A stretch of 64,000 nt of DNA, taken from Macrostomum lignano. Taxonomy: Eukaryota. Shown piece after piece: positions 4,701 to 31,041 of this stretch. A model generated the notes under the pieces. That model did not search any database. It saw only the letters and a program-made list of their open reading frames with translations, and was not told where the DNA came from. The first letter of the stretch is position 1. Each line of letters starts with the position of its first letter. Both the position numbers and the translations under genes were made by a program. The stretch lies in NCBI GenBank assembly GCA_002269645.1, contig NIVC01000040.1, forward strand, positions 806,001 through 870,000, given 5' to 3'.

Positions 4701-5075
4701 CTGTCACCCGAAGATGTCCGCCGCCTCACTGAATACGTACGCGGCGCCGCCGACGCCATCGTCGCTGTGAAAGCCGGCGGCGGTTCAGCGACGCTCTCCG
4801 TAGCCGCCGCCGCTCATCGTTTCGTCAACTCGGTGCTGCTAGCCCTGGACGGCCGGCAGAACATTATTGAATCGGCTTTTGTCGAGTCCGACGCCATGCC
4901 CGACCTGCCATTCTTCTCCTGCCCGTTGCTGCTTGGCCAGAACGGCGTCGAACGAAATTTAGGCGTCGGCCAACTGTCCGAGTACGAGGCCGAACTGATG
5001 AAAGCGGCCGTGGCCGAGCTTCGAGTCCAGATTGAAAAGGGCCAGGAATTTGGCTTGGCCTGGGCAAAGCGATGA
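1777..5075 (+). CDS. MDH2: Mitochondrial-type malate dehydrogenase, 3 exons, ~347 aa
   Basis: join(1777..2105,3582..3843,4623..5075); GT-AG introns keep frame. Arg-rich presequence, VAILGACGGLGQPLSL, spliced GIRRQPGMHRDSLF (cf. VPRKPGMTRDDLF), TNPINS, DSVRA, GGHSG, GSATLS motifs. Confidence 0.95.
2230..3480. repeat. ~34-bp minisatellite in MDH intron 1
   Basis: Unit CCCCAATCTCCCTCTATGACCCATTTAGCCAACA in tandem. Confidence 0.95.
3890..4570. repeat. ~60-62-bp minisatellite in MDH intron 2
   Basis: Unit ~CAGCTTCCTCTGTGAGCAGTTGAAATCCCATCTATCTGCCTCATCTTTATCTCGATCCCTT. Confidence 0.9.
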
Positions 5076-7640: not shown

Positions 7641-8465
7641 CTAAACGAGCGGGTCGGAGCACTGGCAGACCACCGGGAAGCTGTCCGTGTCCGGATAGTC
7701 GGACAGCTTGCGCTGAAGCAGCACGCCGGCATTCTCGGCGGCCAAATTGTTGTTCGGCTGGTCGGCGTCCCACACGGCCGACCGAACTGGCAGCCGCGGC
7801 GGGCTGGGACCAGCGCAGGGATGCCAGTGCCAGCCGCCGGCAGGCTCAGAGGAGTTCGGCAGCTGGACGGCGCCAGTCCAAACCGGGTTGCCGATGGCGC
7901 CGCCGTAGATGACCAACGCCGATTCGATGTCGTCGTCGTTGTCCAGCTGAGCCGGTCTGGTCAATTCGCCGTCAGCTAAGCACCTGGCCGCCTGCGTGGA
8001 CCAGTTTCCAACGGAGGTGTATAGTTTGTACTTGTAGCCATGGTAACCGCCGGTCGTGTTAGCGGCTACTCGATAATCAGGCGGACAAGTCGCGCCGGCT
8101 CGAATGTACACGGTGACGTTGATGGCCTCAGTGGGCAACTCGCCGACTGTGCAGTTTGATCTGCGGACTGCGGCGCTGCAGCGGCTCCACGCGTAGAGGC
8201 TGCACCGACCGCGGGCGGCATCGAAACTGAACGCCCTACAGTCGGCCTGCGCTGAGCAGGCCACGGCACAGGGTCGCTCGTCGGAGTAGACAGCCGCCAG
8301 CCGTCTGATGTACTCGGAGGCCACGCACAGCAGCGGCAGACGGACGGGGCTGTAGATTTTGCCGCCGGCATCGCGGCTGTTGCAGCTGCTGGCTGTTTCC
8401 ATGGCAACTAGAGTCGCTAGTAGAGCGGTAAGCATTAGCGACATTTTTAACGATGACGCTCTCAT
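7641..8465 (-). CDS. Secreted PAN/Apple + C-type lectin-like protein, intronless, 274 aa
   Basis: N-terminal hydrophobic signal; PAN pattern CAVAC...CRAFSF...CSLY; CTL pattern W...C...VWTG...WHW...W...QPNN...EN...LSD...VVCQ; AATAAA follows the stop on the minus strand. Confidence 0.8.
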   Translation of the reverse strand: MRASSLKMSLMLTALLATLVAMETASSCNSRDAGGKIYSPVRLPLLCVASEYIRRLAAVYSDERPCAVACSAQADCRAFSFDAARGRCSLYAWSRCSAAVRRSNCTVGELPTEAINVTVYIRAGATCPPDYRVAANTTGGYHGYKYKLYTSVGNWSTQAARCLADGELTRPAQLDNDDDIESALVIYGGAIGNPVWTGAVQLPNSSEPAGGWHWHPCAGPSPPRLPVRSAVWDADQPNNNLAAENAGVLLQRKLSDYPDTDSFPVVCQCSDPLV

Positions 8466-9498: not shown

Positions 9499-10983
9499 TT
9501 AAACAAGCGCAGGCAGCAGCATCAACAGCAGCTGTACAGCAGCGAGCATGATCGACAGTTGCCCAGCTGATGCGGACATGACAAACTTGGAGGCCAACGC
9601 CACAGCGCCGCTGCCATTAGCCTGGCAGGCCATGGCCTCGCAGGCCCGCAGCACCCGCTTCTGCTGCTGTTGCTCCATCAGCTGCGGCTGCAACCCCAGG
9701 CTGGGCATCAGAAAGTCCACGAACAGCTGAAACGAAGCTTCCGGCTTCTCAATCGGGGTGCTGTGACCCGCGCCAGACACCGACCTGTACCGAATGGTGA
9801 AGGCGTTCAAGGACGTCTCGGAGCCGCCCACCTGAACGGAAGCGGCGCCGAACATGCACTGGCAGTAGTACCAGGAGTAGCGGTTGCCCTGTAGCGGCCA
9901 GGTCATATTGTCGACGAAGCCCGCCGTGGCCAGGTAAGGCAACAGGTAGTCTAGATTGCCATTGTACAGCAGTACATCAATGTTGCTCCTGTTGAGCAGC
10001 AGTAGCTGATGGGTCAGGGCCTCATTGCGGAAATCGTAGCTTGTGAAGATGCGGCCGCTGCAGATGTGGTAGCGCTTGGCCTGAGGCGACACGCCCAAAG
10101 CGCGACGCACGTCCGGCCTCTGCAGGTAGTGCTCCATGGCGGTGGTGTTCAAACACCTGTACGAGTCGTTGTAGCCCAGGATGTTGTGATGGCAGAGGCT
10201 CTCAACGTTGTACTCATTGAAAGTCGGATCGGGATCTTTGAACTGTTTCTCAGTCACGGGCATCAGACCCATGAAGTAGGCGAACTCGGCCCTGGCTGCT
10301 AGCATCGCCTCCCGACCCATAAAGTAGCCGTTGCCAATGGCGACGCCTCGAAGTCGAAGGCCGTCTGGTCTTGACAACCGTTCATCTGCCAGAAGCGCCT
10401 CGGCCAGCAGCGGCAGGTAGACTCCGGCGTAGCTCTCGCCGGTCAGGTAGAAGTTCCTGGCCCGATACTCTGGGAACAACAGCAGGAACTGACGCAGCGC
10501 AAGGATGTTGTCGCGAGTGGTGCTCCCATCGTTCCAGCGAAATTTGCTGGACGTCCGGGCCTTGCCGTAGCTAAAGCCGACACCTGCCGGCGATTCCAGG
10601 TAGAGCATGTTGGCCACACGGTTCCAGGCCCAGGGATTGTGCACCAGCTGGGCCCGGTCGTTCACCAGGAACGGCCCATTGGTGGTCAGCAGGCCGCCGA
10701 TGGACGAGCAACCGGGGCCGCCGTTCAACCACAGGACCAGCGGCGCCTCTTCCGGCGGCTTCTCCGAGCTCTCCACCAGCCAGTAGAACAAGCGGCTGTT
10801 CGACTGCTCAGCCGCCTGCAGATAGCCGGAGTATTGGCCAAACCGTGGGCCCATCGTCGGCTGGCCTGGCAGGTTGACGATGCGGTGCCTCTGAGCACTG
10901 CATGGTTGCGACATCAGCGATAGCGACATCGTCAACCACAGCAACAGCAGCTGGAGATTGTGGCGGCTCAGATGAAGTGCCAT
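9499..10983 (-). CDS. Serine carboxypeptidase, family S10 (cathepsin A-like), intronless, 494 aa
   Basis: Signal peptide; WLNGGPGCSS, LESPAGVGFSY, GESYAG (catalytic Ser), YNGNLD (Asp), GAGH (His); hydrophobic C-terminal tail. Confidence 0.95.
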   Translation of the reverse strand: MALHLSRHNLQLLLLWLTMSLSLMSQPCSAQRHRIVNLPGQPTMGPRFGQYSGYLQAAEQSNSRLFYWLVESSEKPPEEAPLVLWLNGGPGCSSIGGLLTTNGPFLVNDRAQLVHNPWAWNRVANMLYLESPAGVGFSYGKARTSSKFRWNDGSTTRDNILALRQFLLLFPEYRARNFYLTGESYAGVYLPLLAEALLADERLSRPDGLRLRGVAIGNGYFMGREAMLAARAEFAYFMGLMPVTEKQFKDPDPTFNEYNVESLCHHNILGYNDSYRCLNTTAMEHYLQRPDVRRALGVSPQAKRYHICSGRIFTSYDFRNEALTHQLLLLNRSNIDVLLYNGNLDYLLPYLATAGFVDNMTWPLQGNRYSWYYCQCMFGAASVQVGGSETSLNAFTIRYRSVSGAGHSTPIEKPEASFQLFVDFLMPSLGLQPQLMEQQQQKRVLRACEAMACQANGSGAVALASKFVMSASAGQLSIMLAAVQLLLMLLPALV

Positions 10984-12859: not shown

Positions 12860-13722
12860 ATGGCCCTGACTCTGCCTCTGGCGTCAGATCCGGCGTCAGA
12901 ACCGGCTGTCAAGTCGCCTTCTAGTCCAGCGACAACGCCGCACCACCAGCCGCAGCAGCAGCAGCCTCCACCGTCGCCAGCAAATTTGACGTCTCAACCC
13001 GAAGAGATTGGCTCCAACCCTTTCTTAGACGCATTCTTCGCGGTTGACAAAGACCATAGCGAGTCCATCACATCCGAGGAACTGTCGGATTACATGTCCA
13101 ATTCTCAGTTTGAGAACAACTTTGGAGAGGTAACTGTATACGCTTAAAGTTGTAAAATTACTTTACTGAGGTTACATTAAGAAGCTACATGAATGTTACG
13201 CCTAAATTCGACATCATTCTTCCGCTCAGAAATGGATGAAGCTCTTTGACGAAGACGCTGATGGTACGATCACTCTGGAAGAGTACTGCAACGTACTTGG
13301 TCTCAACCCGAAACAGGCGTAAGTCAACTTGGTTTGCTAACGTGTTACATCTGATGCTGGGTTTTGAATATATTAAAATGAATGCATCACTTAGGAGAGT
13401 CTATCGCGACAAGAAAGTCAGAGCCGCCTGCCTAAAAGAGAACCGATTGCCCGAAGACGTCGCCTGCATTTCGGCCAGTATGCAGTTGGAGACGCAGTTA
13501 GACGTAATTGAAGTATTTCGCGAGGCTCAGCGTCGCAGTCAGCAGGCCAGAGACATTGCGGCCTACATGAAAACCCAGCTGGATCAGCAGTTTGGTCGCC
13601 TGTGGCACATTGTGCTGCTGACTGGACAGTACTGGGCCAGCTACAGTCACGAGCCGGGGATGGCGCTATTCTTCAAATCCAACAAGTTCATCGTGATGGC
13701 CTGGCGAACGCCCGGCATTTAG
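12860..13722 (+). CDS. EF-hand + dynein-light-chain domain protein (TAL/tegument-antigen-like), ~228 aa
   Basis: join(12860..13129,13230..13318,13395..13722), phases 0 and 2 consistent. EF hands DKDHSESITSEEL and DEDADGTITLEEY; DLC-like AAYMKTQLDQQFGRLWHIVL...YSHEPG...FF. Confidence 0.9.
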
Positions 13723-14787: not shown

Positions 14788-16432
14788 TCACACTCGTCGC
14801 TTGATGCCGAAATCCTCGAAGTCCAGCATGGCGTCTTCCTCCTTGGATACGTGCAGGATTCTTCGTTGCAGGCCGATGCTGGCCGGCTTAAAGTTCTCTC
14901 CGTCGTTGGCCTCCTTGATGGATTTGACGGCTTCCACGGTCTGAGGAATTTTTTCAATTGGTTTTGGTTGCATTTCGTAAAAAACCATAAACATTTAATG
15001 TCAGGTATACTCTACTGACAAAAGTAGAAATAAAAACATTTTTCGAGAATTTTGTAAAAATCTATAGATGTTTCATGCAAGAGATACTCTACTGACAAAA
15101 GTAGAAATAAAAACATTTTTCGAGAATTTTTGTAAAAATCTATAGATGTTTCATGCAAGAGATACTCTACTGAAGAAAGTAGAAAGGAAAACATTTTTCG
15201 ATAATTTTTGTACGAACAGTAAACATAAAAGCATTTTACACATTTTAAGTTTTGCGTAGGGTAAGTTATGTGAGCTTTTTCTCACCCAGTCGAAGACGGC
15301 GAATGCGGCCGGACTCTGCAGGGCCATCTCGCGCCTGTCGATGCCGCTGAGAATCTGCTGACTGCGCGCGGCGATGCGCGGATCAACGCTGGTAGCGTCG
15401 AAGCCACCGTTGGCGAGGCGCTCGACGCCCTTCAGCAGCGGCTGGCAGCGCTTCCATTTCTGGAAGGAATTCATTGAAATGGGGGCGCTTGCTGTCAGTG
15501 AGGAGAGCTTCATCACTGATTTGAAGAGGGAGAATCTGCAGTGCGCATTTCGATATTAAACTAATTGCATTTCATTTGCTTCCCGAATTCCCTCTATTTC
15601 TCTCTTTAATCCATTTCTCTACCAGAATTCCCTCCATTTCTCTTCTAGAATTCCCTCCATTTCTCTACTAGAATTCCCTCCATTTCTCTACTAGAATTCC
15701 CTCCATTTCTCTACTAGAATTCCCTCCATTTCTCTACCGGAATTCCCTCCATTTCTCTACTAGAATTCCCTCCATTTCTCTACTAGAATTCCCTCCATTT
15801 CTCTACCGGAATTCCCTCCATTTCTCTACTAGAATTCCCTCCATTTCTCTACCGGAATTTCCTCCATTTCTCTACTAGAATTTCCTCCATTTCTCTACTA
15901 GAATTTCCTCCATTTCTCTACTAGAATTCCCTCCATTTCTCTACCGGAATTCCCTCCATTTCTTTACCGGATTTCCCCCCATTTCTCTACCGGAATTCCC
16001 TTTATCTTCGCATGGCGAGTCCCAAGCCTGCTGCTGCTGCCAGTCAAACGCTCACCCTAGTCCGTTTCTCATAGTTGCCAGCCAGCAGCAGCAGGGCCTG
16101 CACAGTTTTGTGCACCGACTCCACCGGTCGCTGGTAGGCCCGAAGCTCCAACAGACTGCGCGCTGTCATCATCGACTGCTGCTGTTGCTTCTTTTGCATG
16201 TCAACGCTGTTCAACTTCCGTTCGCGTTCGATCAGCTCGTCAGCTTCTTCCAGCTCGGAGCGCAGCATCAGCCGCTGATTGTCTGTCAGACTCTCCGACT
16301 TCACCTGCTCCACCAGCTGGGTCAGCCGGCCGACACTGCGATACTTCTTCGACCGGCTGATGGCCGAGCGGAGGACTGCGGAGTATGAGCAGGTCTTGCT
16401 GCAGATTGGCTGACAGACAGTCAGACAGACAG

Positions 16433-16527
<95 letters not shown>

Positions 16528-16530
16528 GGC

Positions 16531-16622
<92 letters not shown>

Positions 16623-19600
16623 GGACAGACAGACAGACGGGCAGACAGACGGACAGACAGACGGGCAGACTCACTTTTCCGCTGCTCCAGAGCGTGCAGC
16701 GTCAGCTTGGCTTCCTTGAGCTTCTTCACCTCGCGCTCCTTCAGCATGATCCGCTCGGCGGCGGCCTCGGTCTCGGTGATGGCATCGCCAATTCTGTCGG
16801 CGTTGCGCGGCTTGGCCAGCAGGGCGGAGTCGAGCTCGGCGAAGCGCAGCTTCAGCTGCTCCCGCCGCGGCGAAGTCTTGGAACCTCCGGCGCCCTGATG
16901 TTTGGCCGTTGGCTGGCCTCTGCCCTGCGATTGTTCGATAGAGAAAAAAGCCATCACCTGAGATTTAAACTTTAAAAGCTTTTCTCGTAAAACTGTCTGA
17001 AGAATAAAAAGCTACTCACAGTAGTCACTGCTCTACCGGGCGACACACCACCAGAAGGCCGAGGCGATCTGACGGGCGGAAGCGTTTTCTGCTTCGAAGA
17101 ATGAAAAGCAGCAACTGGCTGCTCCTGTTGCTGCTTTGTTGGCTTCCTTTCATCTTTAGCGGCTTGTGCCTCGTCAGCTGCGAAAGCTGCCGGTTGATCC
17201 TCCTCGGCTGGGGCAGCTTCCGGTTGAGCCTCCTCGGCTGGGGCAGCATCCGGTTGAGCCTCCTCGGCTGGGGCAGCATCCGGTTGAGCCTCCTCGGCTG
17301 GGGCAGCATCCGGTTGAGCCTCCTCGGCTGGGGCAGCTTCCGGTTGAGCCTCATCAGCCACTGGCTGCGCATCCTCGGCTGGGGCAGCATCCGGTTGAGC
17401 CTCCTCGGCTGGGGCAGCTTCCGGTTGAGCCTCATCAGCCACTGGCTGCGCATCCTCGGCTGGGGTAGCTCCCGGTTGAGCCTCCTCGGCTGGGGCAGCT
17501 TCCGGTTGAGCTTCATCAGCCACTGGCTGCGCATCATCGGCTGGGGTAGCTCCCGGTTGAGCCTCCTCGGCTGGGGCAGCTTCCGGTTGAGCTTCATCAG
17601 CCACTGGCTGCGCATCATCGACTGGAGCAGCTTCCGGTTGAGCCTCCTCGGCTGGGGCAGCTTCCGGTTGAGCTTCATCAGCCACTGGCTGCGCATCATC
17701 GACTGGAGCAGCTTCCGGTTGAGCCTCCTCGGCTGGGGCAGGTTCCGGTTGAGCCTCCTCGGCTGGGGCAGCTTCCGGTTGAGCATCGTCGGCTGGGGCA
17801 GCTTCCGGTTGAGCCTCATCAGCCACTGGCTGCGCATCCTCGGCTGTGGTAGCTTCCGGTTGAGCATCGTCGGCTGGGGCAGCTTCCGGTTGAGCCTCAT
17901 CAGCCACTGGCTGCGCATCCTCGGCTGTGGTAGCTTCCGGTTGAGCCTCATCAACCACTGGCTGCGCATCCTCGGCTGGGGTAGCTTCCGGTTGAGCCTC
18001 ATCTGCTGGAGCAGCTTCCGGTTGAGTTTCATCGGCTGGGGTAGCTTCCGGTTGAGCCTCATCAACCACTGGCTGCGCATCCTCGGCTGGGGCAGCTTCC
18101 GGTTGAGCTTCATCAGCCACTGGCTGCGCATCATCGGCTGGAGCAGCTTCCAGTTGAGCCTCCTCGGCTGGGGCAGGTTCCGGTTGAGCCTCCTCGGCTT
18201 GAGCAGCTTCCGGTTGAGCATCGTCGGCTGGACCACCTTCCGGTTGAGCCTCATCGGTAGAGGCAGCCTCCGTTTTAGCCTCATCGGTAGAGGCAGCCTC
18301 CGGTTTAGCCTCATCGGTAGAGGCAGCCTCCGGTTTAGCCTCATCGGTAGAGGCAGCTTCCGGTTGAGCTTCAAAGACTTGAGCAGCTTCCGCTTGATCC
18401 TCACCAGCCACTGGCTGCGCATCCTCGGCTGGGGTAGCTTCCAGTTGAGCCTCATCTGCTGGAGCAGCTTCCGGTTGAGTCTCCTCGGCTGGGGTAGCTT
18501 CCGGTTTAGCCTCATCAGCCACTGGCTGCGCATCCTCGGCTTGAGTAGCTTCCGGTTGAGCCTTCTCAGCTGGTGCAGCTTCCGGTTGAGCCTCATCGGC
18601 CGGGGTAGTTTCCTGTTGAGCCTCCTTGGCTGGGGCAGCTTCCGGTTGAGCCTCATCGGCTGGAGAAACTTCCGGTTGAGCCTCCTCGGCTTGAGCAGCT
18701 TTTGGTTGAGCTTCATCGGTAGAGGCAGCTTCCGGTTGAACCTCATCGGTAGAGGCAGCTTCCGGTTGAGCCTCATCGGCTAGAGAAACTTCCGGTTGAG
18801 CCTCCTCGACTTGAGCAGCTTCCGGTTGAGCCTCATCGGCTGGGGCTGCTTTCGGTTGAGCTTTTTCTATTGGGGCAGCTTCCGGTTGTGCCTCATCAGC
18901 CACTGGCTGCGCACCCTCGGCTTGGGTAGCTTCCGGTAGAGCCTCGTCAGCTGGGCCAGCTTCTGGTTGAGCCTCATCAGCTGGGGCAGTTTCCGGTTGA
19001 GCCTCCTCGGCTTGAGCAGCTTCCGGTTGAGCCTCATCGGTAGAGGCAGCTTCCGGTTTAGCCTCATCGGTAGAGGCGGCTTCCGGTTTAACCTCATCGG
19101 CAGAGGCAGTTTCCGGTTTAGCCTCATCGGTAGAGGCAGCTTCCGGTTTAGCCTCATCGGTAGAGACAGCTTCCGGTTTAGTCTCATCGGCAGAGGCAGC
19201 TTCCGGTTTAGCCTCATCGGTAGAGGCAGCTTCCGGTTTAGCCTCATCGGTAGAGGCAGCTTCCGGTTTAGCCTCATCGGCAGAGGCAGCTTCCGGTTTA
19301 GCCTCATCGGTAGAGGCAGCTTCCGGTTTAGCCTCATCGGCAGAGGCAGCTTCCGGTTGAGCTTCATAGACTTGGACTGCTTCCGCTTGATCCTCATCAG
19401 CCACTGGCTGCGCATCCTCGGCTGGAGTAGTTTCCGGTTGAGCCTCATCAGCCACTGGCTGCGTATCCTCGGCTGGGGCGGCTTCCGGTTGAGCCTCATC
19501 AGCCACTGGCTGCGCATCCTCGGCTGGAGTAGTTTCCGGTTGAGCCTCATCAGCCACTGGCTGCGTATCCTCGGCCGGGGCGGCTTCCGGTTGAGCCTCA

Positions 19601-21011
19601 TCAGCCACTGGCTGCGCATCCTCGGCTGGGGCAGCTTCCGGTTGAGCCTCATCGGCGGGAGAAACTTCCAGTTGAGCTTCCTCGGCTTGAGCAGCTTTTG
19701 GTTGAGCCTCATCGGTAGGGGCAGCTTCCGGTTTAGCCTCATCGGTAGAGGCAGCTTCCGGTTGAACTTCATAGACTTGGGCAGCTTCCGCTTGATCCTC
19801 ACCAGCCACTGGCTGCGCATCCTCGGCTGGGGCAGCTTCCGGTTGAGCATCATTAGCGGAGGCAGCTTCTGGTTTAGGCTCATCGGTTGAGGCAGTTTCT
19901 CGTTGAGCCTCATCAGCAACTGGCTGCGCATCCTCGGCTGGGGCAGCTTCCGGTTTAGCTTCTTCGGTTGAGGCATCTTCTAGTTTAGCCTCCTTGGTCA
20001 AGGCAGCTTCTGGTTGAACCTCATCAGCTTGTGAAGCTTCTTGCGCTTGAGCCTCATCGGCTTGAGCAGGTTCTTCTGGTTGAGTGTCATCGGCTTGAGC
20101 AGCTTCCTTTTGAGCATCATCGGATTGAGCAGCTTCCGGTTGAGTCTCATTAGCTTGATCAGCTTCCGGTTGAGCATCTTCAGCTGGGGAATCATTCTGT
20201 TGTGCCTTGTGCTCTTGATCAGCTTCTACTTTAGTTTTATCAGCTTGAGCAGCTTCTTTTTGTTGAGTGTCATCGCCTTGAGCAGCTTTCAGTTGAGCAT
20301 CGTCGGCTGGAGCAGCTTCCGGTTGAGCATTGTCGGCTGGAGCAGCTTCCGGTTGAGCATTGTCGGCTGGAGCAGCTTCTGGTTGAGCATCGTCGGCTGG
20401 AGCAGCTTCTGGTTGAGCATCGTCGGCTTGAGCAGCTTCTAATTGCTTAGTCCCTCCAAGGGGCTCCGCAGCTGGTTCAGGTGCCGTGTCCTGTCTTACT
20501 GGCACTTTGTCGCCATCGCTGCGACCGTTCTTAGGGCTCTGTTGAAGGATGAAAAAGTTTGGAAGTGACAAATATGTTTATAGTCGAGTACATCGATAGG
20601 CTCGTACTATGGAGTAGACATTGGCGAGCTTGTATGTGCTCAGGAGTCAGCGGAGACGATGTCGCTGAAGGCATTTTACCGGGGTGCCCACGGCCCTTTT
20701 GTACTCGTAATAACAATTATTATTATTATTATGCTAGTAATTCATTGTTTGGTAACGCTGTAAGACTCAGCAATGAAAGATTCAGTTATGAAATGTTCTG
20801 AGCACAAGTATTCAACTTCATACGGTTATAATTGTGCAAATTTGGCTACAGAATTCACGCTTGCCAGAAGGTGACCTATTGAAGTTAGTGTTAAAGCGCT
20901 TGCAAACTTGCCATGTCGGTAATGCATTTTTCAGAGAAAACCAGCAATGAAAGCCAAGCAACTCACCGCCGCCCGCTGCTCAGCAGCCAACTCAGTCGAG
21001 GCTTCTGTCAT
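14788..21011 (-). CDS. ~1486-aa protein: ~1100-aa acidic Ala/Glu/Pro/Gln/Asp repeat + helical region + C-terminal module resembling the dynein stalk microtubule-binding domain
   Basis: complement(join(14788..14940,15286..15459,16056..16375,16675..16924,17020..20538,20967..21011)); all introns GT-AG and frame-consistent (4461 nt). Exon 1 MTEASTELAAEQRAA|gtgagt. Repeat units EAQPEAAPAD/DAQPVAD. Spliced C-terminus SLLELRAYQRPVESVHKTVQALLLLAG...KWKRCQPLLK...FDATSVDPRIAARSQQIL...SPAAFAVFDWTV. Confidence 0.8.
15008..15200. repeat. ~77-bp tandem repeat, ~2.5 copies (intronic)
   Basis: TACTCTACTGACAAAAGTAGAAATAAAAACATTTTTCG recurs at 15008, 15085 and 15163. Confidence 0.9.
15590..15990. repeat. 23-bp minisatellite GAATTCCCTCCATTTCTCTACTA (intronic)
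   Basis: Direct tandem copies. Confidence 0.95.
16420..16668. repeat. (CAGA)n microsatellite filling intron 3 of the acidic-repeat gene
   Basis: Direct observation. Confidence 0.95.
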
Positions 21012-22491: not shown

Positions 22492-25400
22492 CTATAATTT
22501 GGCATTGTTGGACCTCGTCTTGCCAATTCCGGTCCGTAATTTTGAACTGGCAACGGAGGCGCCGCTAATGCTGCCAGTCTCCGAGTCGGAATTGTACTTG
22601 GCGTCCTCCGCGGGCGTCACGCCCAGGATGCGGGCCTGCTGTCGCACGCTGGCCGGCTTGAACCGGTCCGGCGGGGTGGCTCGCTCTATTGTTGCAACAG
22701 TTTTCACGCCCTGTGTGGATGCAAATATAAGATTAAGGCGTATCTCAACTGTCTTTGCTAAGGCCCGTGCCGATCTTGAACTTGAAAATGCTGGCAATAA
22801 ATATTCGAAATATTTTTTTATCCTTTTGGTAAAGAAACAAAAATTTTCTGAATTTCTGAATACTAAACTAACAAACCCGGAGAAAATTCACGAATCCTGA
22901 ATTAACAAACGCTGAGAAAATAAACAAATTCTAAATTAAAAATACTCGGCAGAAAATTCACGAACTCTAAATAACAAACGCAGAGAAAATTCAGAAACCT
23001 TAAATTACAAACTCCGAGACATTTCACGAATCCTAAATTAACTACTATGAAGGAAATCACGAATCCTACATTAACAAACCCGGAAAAAACTCACGAATCT
23101 TGAATTTAAAAAATTCAGAGGAATTAACAAACACGAAAGTAACGTCTTGAAGCTGCGAAGCCTTCGTTCCTTACCCATTCATAGAAAGCGAAGGCGGCAG
23201 CACTGCGCTGTTCAACCTCTTGAGCGTCGATGCCGTCTAGGATCTGCTTGCTTCTGGCAGCGATGCGCGGATCGACGCGGGTCACGTCCAGCGCGTCCAT
23301 GTCGTGCAGGATGGTGCGGAGCAGCGGCTGGCAGCGCTTCCATTTCTGTCTTTTGGGAAACGGGTGGATATAGTTTCAAACCGGTTCTTTTGGGGCAGTA
23401 CATAATAATTTGTTTACCGAGAAGCAGAGAAGAACACATGCAAAAACGTTAAATTGACAAGTCAAGTTTAGAGGCCTGATCTATTTAGGTCTGTCAGAAC
23501 TTGCATGAGGATATGTAACACATTTTGGATGCAGGATCTGTATGAGCTGTAGGTTTCGTAGGACTTTAAGAATCTGTATGACCTGTAGGATTTCGTACGG
23601 TCTGAGGGATCTGTATGACCTGTAGGATTCGTTAGGACTCGAAGGATCTGTATGACCTGAAGTATTCGTTAGGACTCGAAGGATCTGTATGACCTGTAGT
23701 ATTCGTTAGGACTCGAAGGATCTGTATGACCTGTAGGATTTCGTAGGACTCGAAGGATCTGTATGACCTGTAGGATTCGTTAGGACTCGAAGGATCTGTT
23801 TGACCTGTAGGATTTCTTAGGATCTGAGTGACTCTAAATTAGTATCTAAAGAATCAGTCGAATCCCTCGATTTCTTAAAGGACCAAAAGTGAACAACAGT
23901 AAAAACTGGCCGCCAACTCGCCCTAGTCCGCTTCTCGTAGTGTCCGGCCAGCAGCAGCACAGCCTGCACGGCACCGTGGACCGCGTCCTGCGGACTGGAG
24001 TACCGTCTGAGCTCTGTGAGGCTACGCGAGTTCGCTCCCAGTCGGTGCCGCGGCTGCCTCGCGCGCCGATTGTAACGCCACATAGCCTGTCGAGCTGCCG
24101 TCGCCTCCGCCGATACCAGCTTGGCCGCAACCGACGTCTTTGACATCGACGTAGCCGAAATTGAGGTCAGACCGAGATCGTCGAGCTCGCTTAGTAGGCG
24201 ACGAAGCCGATGAACATCAGTCTGTTCGACAGCGCGCTGCAGATCTACATGTAAAAGCGTAGAACGTTTCAGAAGTGTCCCGAATCTATGATTATTATCC
24301 ATTTGGTAGCTAAATACGCGACGCAAAAATATACGTGGAAAGCTAAATTTACCTACTGAATCCAAGTGCACGATTAATTTAGCTGAGTTGCTAACAGGAA
24401 CCAATTAGCCAAGGGACCCAATGGCGTACGCAGGAATTTTAATTGGACGGAGCGCCCCAATTTTTCAGTGTCTGGTTTGACACCCCGATCTTCTAGGTGG
24501 GCGCCTCTGTCTCTTGGTGGGCGCCCCTGTCTTTTGGTGGGTGTCCCTGTCTCTTGGTGGGTGTCCCTGTCTCTTGGTGGGTGTCCCTGTCTCTTGGTGG
24601 GTGTCCCTGTCTCTTGGTGGGTGTCCCTGTCTCTTGGTGGGTGTCCCTGTCTCTTGGTGGGTGTCCCTGTCTCTTGGTGGGTGTCCCTGTCTCTTGGTGG
24701 GCGCCCCTGTCTTTTGGTGGGTGTCCCTGCCTCTTGATGGGTGTCCCTGTCTCTTGGTGGGCGCCCCTGTCTCTTAGTGGGCACCCCTGTCTCTTAGTGG
24801 GCGTCCTTGTCTCTTGGTGGGCGCCCCTGTCTCTTGGTGGGCGCCCCTGTCTCTTGGTTGGCGTTAATCAATGTTAATTTAAAAGTGTTAAAATCTAATA
24901 TTTCTAAACATTAGAAATACCAAATCAGCCTCGGCCTCGGCCATCTCGCCGCCATGTCGCCGTCGTTCCCAACCTCGAGGGCGCCAGGCCACGCGGAGCA
25001 GCTCGACACGTTCAACTGTCTCCTTGACCGTATCGACAGGCACATACAGTTCCGCGGCAGTTGTCGCTTTGTACGGCTCGCCAAAGACGTCTTTGGACGC
25101 GCCTGACGCTGCCGACTCCACCAGACGCTGCCAGTTCGGCTGCGGCTGCTGCCGCCAGGCGGCTCCGTCGGCGTCGTCGGCGCCGCAGTCGGCTGCCACC
25201 AAGAACTGACAGACGGGCCGGTCGCGCAGACGCAACACCAGAGCGAATTGGCCGCCGCCGGCCGGTGCGTAAAAATGTACACCGAGTCTGGACAGGTAGG
25301 CCGTGCCGGGAGGGGTCAGACGATCACCCTGCTGGTAGACACGGCAGGTGAGCCTCAGGTAGCCATCACCGTCAATGTGCATCAATGCGACGGCCGCTTC

Positions 25401-28400
25401 ACCATTTGATGCCGATAGTTCACCGTTGGCAATGTCGCAGCCGAGCTCTAGACTGCCACCTGTAGCGGTGTTTCTCGTCGATATGTAACTGTGATTTCGT
25501 AGTGTGGTCGTCATTAAAGATACTCTCTAGAGTATTGTGAGAATTGTGGTCTAATTGGTACTGATCTAGCTGTAGGAACTGTGGTCTAATTGGTACTGAT
25601 CTAGCTGTAGGAACTGTGGTCTAATTGGTACTGATCTAGCTGTGGGAACTGTGGTCTAATTGGTACTGATCTAGCTGTGGGAACTGTGGTCTAATTGGTA
25701 CTGATCTAGCTGTGGGAACTGTGGTCTAATTGATACTGATCTAGCTGTAGGAACTGTGGTCTAATTGGTACTGATCTAGCTGTGGGAACTGTGGTCTAAT
25801 TGGTACTGATCTAGCTGTGGGAACTGTGGTCTAATTGATACTGATCTAGCTGTGGGAACTGTGGTCTAATTGGTACTGATCTAGCTGTGGGAACTGTGGT
25901 CTAATTGATACTGATCTAGCTGTAGGAACTGTGGTCTAATTGGTACTGATCTAGCTGTGGGAACTGTGGTCTAATTGGTACTGATCTAGCTGTGGGAACT
26001 GTGGTCTAATTGATACTGATCTAGCTGTAGGAACTGTGGTCTAATTGGTACTGATCTAGCTGTGGGAACTGTGGTCTAATTGGTACTGATCTAGCTGTGG
26101 GAACTGTGGTCTAATTGGTACTGATCTAGCTGTGGGAACTGTGGTCTAATTGATACTGATCTAGCTGTGGGAACTGTGGTCTAATTGGTACTGATCTAGC
26201 TGTGGGAACTGTGGTCTAATTGGTACTGATCTAGCTGTGGGAACTGTGGTCTAATTGATACTGATCTAGCTGTAGGAACTGTGGTCTAATTGGTACTGAT
26301 CTAGCTGTGGGAACTGTGGTCTAATTGGTACTGATCTAGCTGTGGGAACTGTGGTCTAATTGATACTGATCTAGCTGTAGGAACTGTGGTCTAATTGATA
26401 CTGATCTAGCTGTGGGAACTGTGGTCTAATTGATACTGATCTAGCTGTGGGAACTGTGGTCTAATTGATACTGATCTAGCTGTGGGAACTGTGGTCTAAT
26501 TGATACTGATCTAGCTGTAGGAACTGTGGTCTAATTGGTACTGATCTAGCTGTGGGAACTGTGGTCTAATTGGTACTGATCTAGCTGTGGGAACTGTGGT
26601 CTAATTGGTACTGATCTAGCTGTGGGAACTGTGGTCTAATTGGTACTGATCTAGCTGTGGGAACTGTGGTCTAATTGATACTGATCTAGCTGTAGGAACT
26701 GTGGTCTAATTGGTACTGATCTAGCTGTGGGAACTGTGGTCTAATTGGTACTGATCTAGCTGTGGGAACTGTGGTCTAATTGATACTGATCTAGCTGTAG
26801 GAACTGTGGTCTAATTGGTACTGATCTAGCTGTGGGAACTGTGGTCTAATTGGTACTGATCTAGCTGTGGGAACTGTGGTCTAATTGGTACTGATCTAGC
26901 TGTGGGAACTGTGGTCTAATTGATACTGATCTAGCTGTGGGAACTGTGGTCTAATTGGTACTGATCTAGCTGTGGGAACTGTGGTCTAATTGGTACTGAT
27001 CTAGCTGTGGGAACTGTGGTCTAATTGATACTGATCTAGCTGTAGGAACTGTGGTCTAATTGGTACTGATCTAGCTGTGGGAACTGTGGTCTAATTGGTA
27101 CTGATCTAGCTGTGGGAACTGTGGTCTAATTGATACTGATCTAGCTGTAGGAACTGTGGTCTAATTGATACTGATCTAGCTGTGGGAACTGTGGTCTAAT
27201 TGATACTGATCTAGCTGTGGGAACTGTGGTCTAATTGATACTGATCTAGCTGTGGGAACTGTGGTCTAATTGGTACTGATCTAGCTGTGGGAACTGTGGT
27301 CTAATTGATACTGATCTAGCTGTGGGAACTGTGGTCTAATTGGTACTGATCTAGCTGTGGGAACTGTGGTCTAATTGGTACTGATCTAGCTGTGGGAACT
27401 GTGGTCTAATTGATACTGATCTAGCTGTGGGAACTGTGGTCTAATTGGTACTGATCTAGCTGTGGGAACTGTGGTCTAATTGATACTGATCTAGCTGTGG
27501 GAACTGTGGTCTAATTGGTACTGATCTAGCTGTGGGAACTGTGGTCTAATTGATACTGATCTAGCTGTAGGAACTGTGGTCTAATTGGTACTGATCTAGC
27601 TGTGGGAACTGTGGTCTAGTTGTAGGGTCAGAAGGGTCAAACCTGAACTGTCACTCCTGGGCGGTCCAAACTCGGACAGCTCGCCAGACGGGAACCCGCA
27701 ACCGCCGTCGCCGCTCCCGCACCCTACTGGGCAATGCAGCACAAAGCCGACAAAGCAATCGTCATATTGATAGTCATCGTCTTCCGTTAACAGCCGAATC
27801 TCCAAGTAGAATTTGCCTGGCCAAGGCGGCTCCACCTTGAATTTCAGCACGCCGTCGCGATCGGTGCGAATTGGCCGGCTGACGCTGCAGTCGCCCGGCT
27901 GACGGCCGTCGATGGTGTTCGACAGACAGCGAAGGACGCTCGTGTAGCGACAGGACAGGTGACGCCTTTGATGAGTCTCTCGTAGCTCCAACTCGAGCAG
28001 CTCGCCCGGCCGGCCAAGGACAACATTCCACGGCCAGTTAAGGACGGCTAATCGGCCAGAGTGGCGCTCGAACTCCCCAGCCGTGCCACCGGCGAGGTAA
28101 ACGGGCATCCGGTCGAACTCCGACTTGGTGAGCGGTCGGGCGAGCAGCTGCCAGACGGCTGGTGAATCGGTACTTTTATCGTCGCTATTAGCATCAAGCT
28201 GGCAGGGCAGGTGGGTGATGACGAACTGCTCCGGGTCGGTCAGGAAGAAGAACTCCCTGGAGTCTGTGTCGGCCGCCATCGCCGCCCAGTCAATGTCAAC
28301 CAGTCGCCATTCGCCTCGCACAAAACAGGCAAACCAGCTGCCGCCCACCGGGGTGCGAAAGCCGGGGGCCAAGCCGGCACCCTTCTTGTACCCGAGAACT

Positions 28401-31041
28401 CGTTGGAACGGAATGCCAGCCTCGCTGCGTGGGTATGCGAAAGTTGATTTTCTACTTAGTCCCTTTTCATATTACCGATTCCAGAACCAGAATTGGTTCG
28501 GAATTCCAAGAAAAACAGCAGTATAACTATTTAACTCTGTTAATATTTGACTGCCTTAACAACCTCCCTTAGCACAATTTTTCACTTTCTTCGTGGCGAT
28601 TGTCATTCAATAATATAAACTTTATAGCACGTATCTCCCTCTAGTTATGGAGACAAAAAGTTATACTTCACAAATTGGTTCTGGTTCTGGAACCAGAATA
28701 AGCAATATGAAAAGGCCCTTAGTCTGATGATCAAACAGCTATTTTAAGCATTTCCATAATCTTAAACTGAAGTCACGTGCACAAGACTATCAGTGATTTG
28801 CGTCTAGATCAAGCACGTTAATTACCAACCTGAGCAGTTTGGCAAACACCTCAGAGTGTCTGTCCTCTCCCGTGGAGCCAGTCGATTCCTCCATCCGTCG
28901 CAGAGTCCGATAGACCGGCATTTGAAGTTCCGACTCCGTCTTGACGAGTCTCCCAGGCCTGTTGCTGACTGCGCACACAAACCCGAACGCCGCTCTCAAT
29001 CGTTCGAGGTCGCCGCTGCATCTTCCGTACAGACGTTGGCACAAGCTTGCCCAGCTGTCATCTGGCTGCGGCAACTCCTCAGCTGACTGAGCGTCAATTG
29101 TCACAATGTCCGCTGGCTGTTTTTGAAACTGCAGTAGCAGCTCAGCCTTGGTGCGCCGCGGCGGGAACGGAGGCGTTGGTGGCTGCCGGACGTCGTCAAG
29201 CTGCTGCTGGTCCTCTCTGGGCGGCTGTCCCAGCTTGCGTTGGCTTGTAGCCAGGCTCTGCGGCGTCGGGTACTGGCCTGACTGCAGCCGCTCACGAACA
29301 GAGCTCCAGTCGTCTAATGCGTAGTCCTGCGGAGATTATTAATTTTTAGACTAATTAGCCTAAAATTACCGATGGAGTCATCAAACAAAAGCAATTTTTA
29401 CTAGATGGTAGCTATTTTTCTAAATCGATTTGAAGGCTGGTTTAAGCAAATCTATTTGATACTTGATGGGAAATGTTTTATAAAGATTAAACCAAATTCC
29501 TCAAAACAATCGTAGCAGCTTTTCATAGTAAAATTAAATTTACACCGTCGTCGAAGTTTACAGTCGTCGAAACTCGACTGAGGACAAGGCACGCCTGAGA
29601 CCCTAAAAAAAAGCCAAAAACGTTCGCTCGCAATGAACCAGAGACATTCACCCAAGATGAAATCAGAGACGTTCCCTCGAGACGAACCAGAGACGTTCCC
29701 TCGAGACGAACCAGAGACGTTCCCTCGAGACGAACCAGAGACGTTCCCTCGAGACGAACCAGAGACGTTCCCTCGAGACGAACCAGAGACGTTCCCTCGA
29801 GACGAACCAGAGACGTTCCCTCGAGACGAACCAGAGACGTTCCCTCGAGACGAACCAGAGACGTTCCCTCGAGACGAACCAGAGACGTTGTCTCGAGACG
29901 AAATCAGAGACGTTGTCTCGAGACGAACCAGAGACATTCACTCGAAACGAAATCAGAGACGTTCACTCGAGACGAACCAGAGACGTTCACTCGAGATAAA
30001 ATCAGAGAGGTTCCCTCGAGACGAAATCAAAGACGTTCACTCGCGATGAACCAGACGATCACCAGACGTTCACTCGAGACGATCACCAGACGTTCACTTA
30101 AGACGAAATCAGAGACGTTCACGTACTCGAGACGAACCAGACGATCGATCACCAGACGTTCACTCGAGACGAACCAGACGATCGATCACCAGACGTTCAC
30201 TCGAGACGAACCAGACGATCGATCACCAGACGTTCAGTCGAGACGATCACCAGACGTTCACTCAAGACGAAATCAGACACGTTCACTCGAGACGACAGAT
30301 AGTGACTCATTCGCTTTCTTGGAAGGAACTACATGTACTGTACATGCATGGGCTAACTTACAACAATGATTAAATCCAGCTTCTAGGATCGATAGTGCTG
30401 GCTTCATGAACCATCTAGCAATCTAGTGACCCCCTTCGGGGCGCGCAATTAGCAAGGAGCAAAAATTATTCATGGAAAACAATTCAAAGGCACATATCCT
30501 TAAGAACCAATTCCTTCTTCAGTTTTCTAAATCAATCTTATTCGAGTAAAGCAAGCATCCTGCAGATAGCAAGCATCCCCCAGATAGCAAGCATCCCCCA
30601 GATAGCAAGCATCCCCCAGATAACAAGTATCCCCCAGATAGCAAGCATTCACCCAGATAGCAAGCACCCCTGGATAGAAAGAATCCCATACATGAAGATA
30701 CATGTAGCCAGTACCCCGTGTCCCAAATAGCAAGTACACCCTGCCCCTCGAGAGCAAGCATCCCCCGATAGTAAACATATACCTGATGATTAGAAAGTCA
30801 AAGGGCCGCTGTACACCCGTGCGAGCGTGTGTGTGAGTGCGGGCCTGTGTACAGTATTGGGGCGCTTGTATGTGCTCTCAGCACTGGTTAATTTCGGGAC
30901 AATGTCGCCAAAGACGTTGAGACGGGGGTGCCTGCAGTCCTACTACAATTATTATCTTTAGTGCGAACTAACCTGCAGCGGAATCTCAGCTTCCGTCGGC
31001 CGGTAATGTCGATAGTAGCTCAGAGTTTCCAGGAAAGACAT
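22492..31041 (-). CDS. Hillarin/LTD-1/KY-like protein (~860 aa): degenerate transglutaminase-like domain, Ig-like domains, C-terminal dynein-MTBD-like module
   Basis: complement(join(22492..22710,23175..23345,23922..~24236,~24921..25459,27643..28424,28830..29326,30973..31041)); phases consistent except the exon 4/5 junction, which is ambiguous (24236 vs 24244 acceptor). Motifs EVFAKLLSEAGIPFQRVLGYKKGAG, SWFACFVRGEWRLVDIDWAA, EFFFLTDPEQFVITHLP, WQLLARP, FKVEPPWPGKFYLEI. Confidence 0.8.
23570..23825. repeat. ~36-bp minisatellite (intronic)
   Basis: GGATCTGTATGACCTGTAGGATTCGTTAGGACTCGAA-like units. Confidence 0.9.
24495..24860. repeat. 20-bp minisatellite GTGTCCCTGTCTCTTGGTGG (intronic)
   Basis: Direct tandem copies. 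Confidence 0.95.
25545..27618. repeat. 35-bp minisatellite, ~59 near-identical copies (intronic)
   Basis: GAACTGTGGTCTAATTG(G/A)TACTGATCTAGCTGT(G/A)G, no spacers. Confidence 0.98.
28459..28718. mobile_element. Tourist/PIF-Harbinger-like MITE (~260 bp) with TTA target-site duplication, in intron
   Basis: TTA|GTCCCTTTTCATATT...AATATGAAAAGGCCC|TTA; 10/12 terminal inverted match plus inverted subterminal CCAGAACCAG/CTGGTTCTGG. Confidence 0.65.
29660..30295. repeat. 24-bp minisatellite GAGACGTTCCCTCGAGACGAACCA decaying into shorter variants (intronic)
   Basis: Direct tandem copies in intron 1 of the hillarin-like gene. Confidence 0.95.
30550..30775. repeat. ~20-bp minisatellite GATAGCAAGCATCCCCCA
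   Basis: Direct tandem copies. Confidence 0.85.

What the first reader, a model, noticed from the sequence alone, without database searches (positions are those of the whole stretch)
14788..21011. Giant acidic-repeat protein carrying a stand-alone dynein-stalk-like microtubule-binding module
Seen: one 3.5-kb exon encodes ~1100 aa of 10-aa (EAQPEAAPAD) and 7-aa (DAQPVAD) units with almost no aromatic or Cys residues. It is spliced in frame to a helical region and to SLLELRAYQRPVESVHKTVQALLLLAG..W...FDATSVDPRIAARSQQIL...SPAAFAVFDW. Established: the dynein MTBD pattern is roughly L-x-E-[VIL]-R-S...PP..V..[AV]-[LV]E.[IV]C.LLG...W...F....I.......V...S.A...[LM]..W. Inference: a motor-less MTBD fused to a long polyanionic disordered arm is the architecture of a MAP with a projection/spacer domain, possibly organising ciliary or sperm microtubule arrays. 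I know of no description of such a protein.
Basis: partly seen in the sequence, partly recalled or inferred. Interest (0 to 1): 0.75.

Follow-up and report, generated by a model that had tools for sequence, protein, structure and literature searches.

The report
Motor-less dynein-type microtubule-binding protein, acidic arm
A flatworm (Macrostomum lignano) gene joins a roughly 1170-residue, strongly acidic, disordered repeat arm to a small C-terminal domain that is a true relative of dynein's microtubule-binding head; that head belongs to a widespread, apparently undescribed family of motor-less copies usually found at the end of hillarin/KY-type proteins.

Summary
On the minus strand, 21011-14788, six exons with canonical GT-AG borders give a 1497-aa protein. 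Exon 2 (20538-17020) has 1173 codons of 10- and 7-residue acidic units, with net charge -272, no Cys and no Met.

The acidic frame has no stop, although 386 of its codons lie one substitution from one. The basic frame used by database models has 9 stops. No transcript evidence was available.

The MTBD reading is supported, but only through a chain of relatives:
- The protein's own tail hits nothing in Pfam or PDB.
- A profile of it and two paralogs finds 213 proteins, mostly hillarin/KY-like proteins carrying the module at their C-terminus.
- Profiles of those modules hit only dynein heavy-chain microtubule-binding domains in PDB (E down to 8e-14, or 1.6e-11 for a KY-only profile).
- An AlphaFold model (pLDDT 93) has dynein microtubule-binding domains as its top 19 Foldseek hits.

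There is no AAA ring and no long stalk. An intact KY-plus-module paralog lies just upstream, so this gene is probably a partial tandem duplicate whose KY part was replaced by the repeat arm.

Microtubule binding and any role in cilia or sperm are untested. The module is not unique to this protein. I rate it a new variant of a known kind.

The parts
20967..21011 (-). Putative exon 1: ATG plus 14 codons (MTEASTELAAEQRAA), followed by a GTGAGT donor.
   Evidence: Read directly from the sequence. It is in phase with exon 2, but there is no transcript support. It is needed because the acidic frame has no Met.
17020..20538 (-). Exon 2: 1173 codons forming the polyanionic Ala/Glu/Pro/Gln/Asp-rich arm (10-residue EAQPEAAPAD-type and 7-residue DAQPVAD-type units). 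Net charge is -272.
   Evidence: The frame has 0 stops despite 386 stop-prone codons, and simulations show this is unlikely without selection.
17164..20439 (-). Core tandem-repeat array inside exon 2. Period is 30 nt, with higher-order periods of 51, 81, 111 and 171 nt.
   Evidence: Tandem Repeats Finder.
16675..16957 (-). Exon 3: start of the basic helical linker (…REQLKLRFAELDSALLAK…LKEAKLTLHALEQRK). An alternative in-frame acceptor lies at 16925, 11 codons downstream.
   Evidence: The exon is homologous to the end of the Ala-rich exon of the paralog in L001.
16412..16670 (-). (GACA)n microsatellite filling intron 3.
16056..16375 (-). Exon 4: the rest of the helical linker, then MTBD-like helices H1-H2 starting at 16163 (ARSLLELRAYQRPVESVHKTVQALLLLAGNYEKRTR).
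   Evidence: The intron position after YEKRTR is shared with gene B and with the NCBI model P0004.
15610..16001 (-). 23-nt minisatellite inside intron 4.
15286..15459 (-). Exon 5: MTBD-like helices H3 to H6 (KWKRCQPLLKG…SPAAFAVFDW), including the invariant basic cluster KRTRKWKR that spans the exon 4/5 junction.
   Evidence: The model confidence (pLDDT) is 96-98 across this stretch.
14788..14940 (-). Exon 6: end of H6, the family-specific C-terminal tail (…FKPASIGLQRRILHVSKEEDAMLDFEDF…) and the stop codon at 14790-14788.
   Evidence: The tail motif is shared with KY-like members P0007 and P0010.
22492..29311 (-). Context: tandem paralog 'gene B'. It has KY/transglutaminase-like exons (about 29311-24888), then MTBD-like exons (about 24250-23922, 23345-23175 and 22710-22492).
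   Evidence: tblastn, ORFs and sequence. The Ig-like_KY match is weak.

Best explanation
**What it is.** The locus encodes a cytoplasmic, non-motor protein of about 1500 residues built from three parts.
- A very long, Pro-rich, polyanionic arm of about 1170 residues (net charge about -270). It is inferred to be intrinsically disordered.
- A basic helical linker of about 165 residues.
[quoted passage not shown] It is followed by a short conserved tail in place of the return strand of the dynein stalk.

**Where it came from.** The head domain belongs to a family of motor-less MTBD modules that normally end hillarin/KY-like (transglutaminase-like plus Ig-like_KY) proteins. This gene is a tandem partial duplicate of such a gene. 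The KY part is absent, and an Ala/Glu-rich linker has expanded into the repeat arm.

**How it most likely works (inferred, not shown).** The basic head (net +7, with the invariant KRTRKWKR cluster at the start of helix H3) docks on the acidic microtubule lattice as dynein's head does, without any ATP-driven release. The acidic arm then projects outward as an entropic and electrostatic brush that spaces or shields microtubules. That is MAP-like behaviour.
For: **Gene model and frame.**
- All six exons join in frame with canonical splice sites.
- The acidic frame is uniquely stop-free, and simulations show this needs selection.
- The intron positions of exons 4-6 are shared with gene B and with the NCBI-annotated paralog P0004.

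**Family membership of the module.**
- Profile A1 finds 213 proteins at E<=1e-3.
- The module is C-terminal in 128 of 160 proteins.
- 45 of 65 long hits are KY-like, and some are named hillarin-like.
- A1 against the KY-only profile A3 gives hhalign probability 99.9% and E 2e-33.

**Homology to dynein.**
- Profile A2 gives 85 PDB hits at E<=1, and every one of the 60 listed is a dynein heavy chain. The best is 8e-14 and covers helices H1-H6.
- The KY-only profile A3 gives 61 hits, all dynein, with the best at 1.6e-11.
- Pfam MT matches 17 of 52 modules. No other family matches more than 2.

**Fold.**
- The AlphaFold model has pLDDT 93.3 and pTM 0.84 with the expected helix pattern.
- The top 19 Foldseek hits are dynein MTBD or stalk structures. 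6rzb_C has probability 1.00 and target-normalised TM-score 0.64. The weaker first model gave the same picture.

**Charge layout.** Arm -272, linker +9, head +7.

**Origin.** A KY-plus-module paralog lies immediately upstream. The paralog in L001 has an Ala/Glu-rich linker in the equivalent position.
Against: - The protein's own tail gives no Pfam MT hit and no PDB hit. The three-member M. lignano profile alone does not reach dynein either. The link is therefore transitive, and this subfamily is divergent; for example, the PP motif has become RP.
- Foldseek E-values are modest (0.009 or higher), with TM-scores of 0.5-0.64.
- There is no long antiparallel stalk, and in dynein the stalk sets the head's affinity state.
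- A -270 arm could repel the acidic microtubule surface or mask the basic head.
- No transcript, protein, localisation or binding data were available.
- Exon 1 is unsupported.
- Public gene models use a different frame and a different exon 2/3 junction.
- pN/pS among the repeat copies does not separate the acidic frame from the basic one.
Confidence: 0.55

Rival explanations
1. The head is an MTBD-derived fold that no longer binds microtubules. It has been re-used as a docking domain for another partner, such as another cytoskeletal filament or a membrane-cortex protein. The acidic arm would then serve another role, such as binding cations or basic proteins, or acting as a spring.
For: - The M. 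lignano subfamily is too divergent to hit dynein or Pfam MT on its own.
- There is no stalk to set a high-affinity registry.
- The same module sits on very different proteins, including CLCA/VWA, mucin-like and GAF plus EF-hand proteins. This suits a general adaptor domain.
- The first Foldseek run also hit a radial-spoke chain, 7jtk_C.
Against: - The fold and core motifs of the whole MTBD are retained, and all nearly invariant family residues are present.
- The head is strongly basic, with an invariant KRTRKWKR cluster at H3. A tubulin-facing surface would be expected to look like this.
- All listed PDB sequence hits are microtubule-binding heads.
Confidence: 0.25
2. The giant acidic arm is not part of the protein. 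Either the repeat is an expanded minisatellite read in another frame or mostly spliced out, as in the public models of 323-428 aa, or exon 2 and exons 3-6 belong to different transcripts.
For: - Public models P0001, P0002, P0003 and P0162 use the basic frame and a GLLV|GRGQ junction.
- The window is crowded with minisatellites: 49 Tandem Repeats Finder rows in 64 kb.
- The acidic frame has no Met, so it depends on an unverified exon 1.
- pN/pS among the repeats does not favour the acidic frame.
Against: - The basic frame carries 9 stops. Model P0001 leaves that frame 6 codons before one of them and skips 2.8 kb, which looks like a predictor's workaround.
- The acidic frame has 0 stops despite having the larger number of stop-prone codons, and it is very unlikely to stay open by chance.
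- Its GTGAGT donor matches the other four donors of the gene. It is in phase with both candidate acceptors of exon 3.
- Paralogs carry Ala/Glu-rich linkers at the same place.
Confidence: 0.12
3. The gene is a decaying partial duplicate (a pseudogene) of a KY-plus-module gene and has no function of its own.
For: - It lacks the KY part.
- It sits next to a full paralog.
- Related copies show possible defects: a GC donor in gene B and a 1-nt frame break in L001.
Against: - All six exons are intact with consensus splice sites.
- All nearly invariant family residues are kept.
- Near-identical copies exist: P0002 is 99% identical over the same C-terminal region, and P0162 carries the same region with repeat-derived sequence upstream.
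- The 3.5-kb open frame is maintained.
Confidence: 0.08

Closest known systems
Dynein heavy-chain microtubule-binding domain (Pfam MT PF12777; PDB 3ERR, 6RZB, 6KJN, 6RZA)
   Same: - It is a six-helix head with the same order of conserved positions (E/R in H1, P before H2, LLG, W at H3, S.A..F/Y.W in H6).
- Family profiles match it at E 1e-11 to 1e-14.
- The predicted fold superposes on it.
   Different: - There is no AAA+ ring and no long CC1/CC2 antiparallel stalk.
- The domain ends the protein and is followed by a roughly 40-residue conserved tail.
- The M. lignano copies are too divergent for a direct hit.
- Nothing couples binding to nucleotide hydrolysis.
Hillarin / KY-like proteins (Transglut_core plus Ig-like_KY) of molluscs, annelids and flatworms, including window gene B, P0004 and P0007
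   Same: - The C-terminal module and its tail motif (F.PAS…Q..IL.V..EED) are shared.
- The helical linker and the intron positions are shared.
- hhalign gives probability 99.9%.
   Different: - This gene has no transglutaminase-like core and no Ig-like_KY domain.
- The KY part is replaced by the 1173-codon acidic repeat exon.
Classical MAPs with a projection domain (MAP2/tau, MAP1B) and the charged sidearms of neurofilament H and M (from general knowledge, not tested here)
   Same: The architecture is the same: a small basic filament-binding part plus a long, charged, disordered arm thought to space filaments.
   Different: - The binding part is an unrelated fold (a folded dynein-type head rather than tau repeats).
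- The arm is far more acidic and is made of near-perfect short repeats.
PEVK-type and other Pro/Glu-rich entropic-spring segments (from general knowledge)
   Same: It is a Pro/Glu/Ala-rich, low-complexity repeat with almost no hydrophobic or aromatic residues.
   Different: There is no sequence relation. The context differs too, because it is not embedded in an Ig/Fn3 chain.

Membership tests
Dynein MTBD fold (Pfam MT, PF12777) | Significant sequence similarity to dynein MTBDs | tested here: inconclusive
   - Not met directly: there is no Pfam MT hit or PDB hit for the protein itself or for the three-member profile A1.
- Met transitively: A1 against the KY-family profile gives E 2e-33, and the family profiles against dynein give 1.6e-11 to 8e-14 with only dynein hits.
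- Pfam MT matches 17 of 52 modules.
Dynein MTBD fold (Pfam MT, PF12777) | Compact bundle of six short helices, H1-H6 | tested here: met
   - The AlphaFold model has pLDDT 93.3 with helices at 26-33, 40-52, 63-80, 88-98, 103-109 and 111-130.
- The top 19 Foldseek hits against PDB are dynein MTBD or stalk structures, with probability up to 1.00 and TM-score up to 0.64, although E-values are 0.009 or higher.
Dynein MTBD fold (Pfam MT, PF12777) | Head carried on a long antiparallel coiled-coil stalk (CC1/CC2) | tested here: not met
   Only 48 residues follow the conserved Trp of H6, before the stop codon. The model shows a short helix and then two small helices, not a return strand.
Dynein heavy chain | AAA+ motor ring in the same polypeptide | tested here: not met
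   There are no AAA or dynein-motor Pfam hits in the tail. The remaining 1188 residues are exon 1 and the repeat arm.
Dynein MTBD fold (Pfam MT, PF12777) | Binds microtubules at the tubulin intradimer interface (PMC6629372) | not testable with these tools
   Only indirect evidence exists: the head is basic, with net charge +7, pI 10.1 and an invariant KRTRKWKR cluster.
Hillarin / KY-like proteins | Transglutaminase-like core (PF01841) | tested here: not met
   Absent from this gene. Present in relatives P0007, P0009, P0010 and P0021.
Hillarin / KY-like proteins | Ig-like_KY domains (PF23265) | tested here: not met
   Absent from this gene. Present in relatives, weakly in window gene B and in L001.
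Hillarin / KY-like proteins | C-terminal MTBD-like module with its conserved tail | tested here: met
   -.
- All nearly invariant residues (E31, Y35, P38, G54, W63, W119) are present in this protein.
MAP with a projection domain (a functional class) | Long disordered arm attached to a microtubule-binding part, and decoration of microtubules | not testable with these tools
   The architecture fits. Disorder is inferred from composition only, and binding is untested.

The most novel reading that the evidence does not exclude
Motor-less copies of the dynein microtubule-binding head form an old, widespread and essentially undescribed domain class. They tether many kinds of non-motor proteins to microtubules in organisms from a chytrid and a glaucophyte to amphioxus and lophotrochozoans. 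The carriers include hillarin/KY transglutaminase-like, CLCA/VWA, mucin-like and GAF plus EF-hand proteins. The M. lignano gene would be a lineage-specific derivative that turns this tether into a giant polyanionic brush on microtubules.
Probability: 0.4. Interest if true: 0.75.

Novelty: new variant of a known kind. Interest (0 to 1): 0.6.

Why it matters
- **For dynein.** The dynein microtubule-binding head is normally discussed only as the tip of a motor whose affinity is set through the stalk. A family of stalk-less, motor-less copies would show what the head does as a passive tether. It would also offer a natural 'locked' version for structural work.
- **For hillarin/KY-type proteins.** Their cellular role is poorly understood. 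A microtubule-docking end would be a concrete, testable property.
- **For this gene.** It adds an extreme case: a -270-charge arm on a basic head. This is a simple system for testing how charged brushes space or protect microtubules.
- **For annotation.** The public models of this gene appear to read the repeat exon in the wrong frame.

Tried and rejected
- **Direct hmmscan and phmmer of the 317-aa tail** against Pfam and PDB gave nothing relevant. The same was true for the four database homologs.
- **The three-member profile A1 against PDB** gave no dynein hit. A deeper family profile was needed.
- **Mismatch counts by codon position among repeat copies** first seemed to favour the acidic frame, with position 3 > position 1 > position 2. 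A Nei-Gojobori style pN/pS then gave similar or lower values for the basic frame. I dropped this argument and used stop-codon avoidance instead.
- **The look-up of encoding contigs for P0003** found nothing, so DNA from the other M. lignano copies of this gene (P0002, P0003, P0162) could not be compared.
- **A word-indexed search with the KY-only profile** returned only 17 short, mostly unnamed fragments. It did not settle whether characterised hillarins carry the module.
- **Literature searches** for MTBD-like domains, hillarin, kyphoscoliosis peptidase with MTBD, and PF12777 found no description of a motor-less MTBD. The searched library is incomplete.
- **A signal-peptide or secreted reading of the acidic arm** was rejected by eye. 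The N-terminus (MTEASTELAAEQRAASPKNG…) is not hydrophobic.
- **Circularity in the profile.** I considered that the dynein hits might come from dynein fragments included in profile A2. I excluded this by rebuilding the profile from KY-verified proteins only.
Full report
**Observation.** The feature lies on the minus strand. A 1199-codon open frame (16972-20571) encodes Ala/Glu/Pro/Gln/Asp-rich repeats. Reading the sequence gives six exons: 21011-20967, 20538-17020, 16957-16675, 16375-16056, 15459-15286 and 14940-14788. Each intron begins with GTGAG and ends with AG, and the joined frame of 4494 nt gives 1497 aa.

Exon 2 has 1173 codons, with 5 aromatic residues, no Cys, no Met and a net charge of -272. 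Tandem Repeats Finder reports an array at 17164-20439 with period 30 and sub-periods 51, 81, 111 and 171, all multiples of three.

**Organism and existing models.** The tail is 100% identical to a Macrostomum lignano UniProt entry (P0001). It is 99% and 88% identical to P0002 and P0003, and a 53% paralog (P0004) comes from the NCBI assembly. P0003 and another relative (P0006) are auto-named 'MT domain-containing protein'.

These public models are only 323-428 aa long. They read the repeat in a basic frame (MRLNRKLP…), skip about 2.8 kb of it, and join GLLV|GRGQ.

**Which frame is real.**
- Mismatch counts among repeat copies first looked like a coding signature for the acidic frame. A pN/pS calculation did not separate the acidic and basic frames, so I set that argument aside.
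- Stop avoidance does separate them. The acidic frame has 0 stops in 1173 codons although 386 codons are one substitution from a stop. The basic frame has 9 stops, and the other four frames have 7-119.
- With 5% further substitutions drawn from the array's own spectrum, the acidic frame stays open in 0.7% of 300 trials. With 10% it stays open in none.
- The public model P0001 leaves the basic frame 6 codons before one of its stops. This looks like a predictor's workaround for a frame that has no ATG of its own.
- The GTGAGT donor at 17019 matches the other donors of the gene. It is in phase with both possible acceptors of exon 3, at 16958 and 16925.
- Exon 1 and the exon 2/3 junction still lack transcript support.

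**Exons 3-6.** The intron positions after YEKRTR and after the conserved Trp are the same in this gene, in window gene B and in the NCBI model P0004. The exon 3/4 junction lies within one base of the paralog's.

**What the tail is.**
- On its own, the tail hits nothing relevant in Pfam or PDB.
- A profile of this protein, gene B and P0004 (alignment A1) was searched against 1.84 billion representative proteins. It found 213 proteins at E<=1e-3 and 38 at E<=1e-10.
- The module is within 60 residues of the C-terminus in 128 of 160 proteins.
- 45 of the 65 hits of at least 600 aa carry transglutaminase-like and Ig-like_KY domains.
- The source names include 'hillarin-like' (Argopecten, Pecten) and 'KY-like immunoglobulin-like domain-containing' (Patella, Helobdella, Pinctada), together with M. 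lignano transglutaminase-like proteins.
- Other carriers are amphioxus CLCA/VWA and mucin-like proteins, a chytrid protein, a Cyanophora protein and a GAF plus EF-hand protein.

**Link to dynein.**
- A profile of 52 modules (A2) matches 85 distinct PDB sequences at E<=1. All 60 listed are dynein heavy chains. The best is 8e-14, and the alignment runs across the whole head.
- To exclude circularity, I rebuilt the profile from 33 modules of KY-verified proteins only (A3). It still hits 61 PDB sequences at E<=1e-3, all dynein heavy chains, with the best at 1.6e-11.
- A1 against A3 gives hhalign probability 99.9% and E 2e-33.
- A1 alone does not reach dynein, so the link for this protein is transitive.
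- Pfam MT (PF12777) is the only family that recurs among the 52 modules: 17 members match, with the best at 1.7e-5.

**Structure.**
- With three sequences, AlphaFold gave pLDDT 75.5. With the 52-sequence alignment it gave pLDDT 93.3 and pTM 0.84. The helix pattern is that of CC1, H1-H6 and a short following helix.
- In both Foldseek runs against PDB the leading hits were dynein MTBD or stalk structures. With the better model, the top 19 are all dynein, 6rzb_C has probability 1.00 and target-normalised TM-score 0.64, and the best E-value is 0.009. The E-values are weak, but the ranking is unambiguous.
- The dynein head is described as six short helices on an antiparallel CC1/CC2 stalk, binding at the tubulin intradimer interface (PMC6629372). 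Here only 48 residues follow the conserved Trp, and they form a family-specific tail (F.PAS…Q..IL.V..EED), not a return strand. 'Stalk-like' is therefore not supported, while 'MTBD-like head' is.

**Origin.**
- Immediately upstream on the same strand lies gene B. It has KY-like exons (about 29311-24888) followed by MTBD-like exons ending at 22492.
- In the paralog locus L001, KY-like exons, an Ala/Glu-rich helical exon and the module follow each other. Another KY gene at that locus ends in the same tail exon.
- No KY-like sequence is found between 14788 and 22492.
- The simplest reading is a tandem partial duplication that kept the linker and the module. The Ala/Glu-rich linker then expanded into the repeat exon.

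**Mechanism (inferred).** The head is basic (net +7, pI 10.1), with a KRTRKWKR cluster that is invariant in the three paralogs. The linker is basic (+9) and the arm is -272. The most likely function is passive docking on microtubules, with the arm acting as a charged, disordered projection.

The rival explanations are:
- an MTBD-derived adaptor for another partner;
- an arm that is not translated as proposed;
- a decaying duplicate.

None of these can be excluded without experiments.

**Novelty.** Searches for MTBD-like domains, hillarin, kyphoscoliosis peptidase with MTBD, and PF12777 found no description of a motor-less MTBD. The library is partial, however, and UniProt's automatic names show that the similarity has been picked up by machine. 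The domain and the MAP-like layout are both known kinds. The combination, and the wider motor-less family, appear to be new variants.

Noticed in passing
window 13246-13722 (+): This ORF matches dynein light chain type 1 (LC8 family, PF01221, E 3e-15). It is convergent with the 3' end of the MTBD-like gene, about 1 kb away.
   Followed up: partly
window 22492-29311 (-): Tandem paralog 'gene B': a KY/transglutaminase-like gene ending in the same MTBD-like module. The exon ending at 23922 is followed by GC instead of GT, which is either a rare GC-AG intron or a damaged donor.
   Followed up: partly
window 25536-27622, and the whole window: A 35-nt minisatellite (59.6 copies, 97% matches) fills an intron of gene B. 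Tandem Repeats Finder lists 49 rows in 64 kb, most with periods that are not multiples of three. Several sit inside introns of the two genes.
   Followed up: no
window 17025-20195 (-), basic frame: Public M. lignano models (P0001, P0002, P0003, P0162) translate the repeat exon in a basic frame that has 9 stops, and they remove about 2.8 kb as an intron. This is probably a mis-annotation.
   Followed up: yes
L001 about 9960-9990 and 822-1052: At the paralog locus, the frame breaks by one base between …TEAQLAL and VREDLRLAREAIQ. This is either an assembly error or a pseudogene, and the NCBI model P0004 is marked partial. A second KY gene at that locus ends in the same tail exon.
   Followed up: partly
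proteins P0088, P0040, P0062, P0112 and P0133 (not in the window): The MTBD-like module also ends amphioxus CLCA/VWA and mucin-like proteins, a chytrid protein and a Cyanophora protein, and it sits inside a GAF plus EF-hand protein. The first Foldseek run also hit radial-spoke chain 7jtk_C.
   Followed up: partly
window 4623-5075 (+), 7641-8465 (-), 9499-10983 (-), 49340-50503 (-), 57629-58453 (-): Ordinary neighbouring genes: the C-terminal part of a malate/lactate dehydrogenase, a PAN-domain secreted protein, a serine carboxypeptidase S10, Headcase and Vta1.
   Followed up: partly
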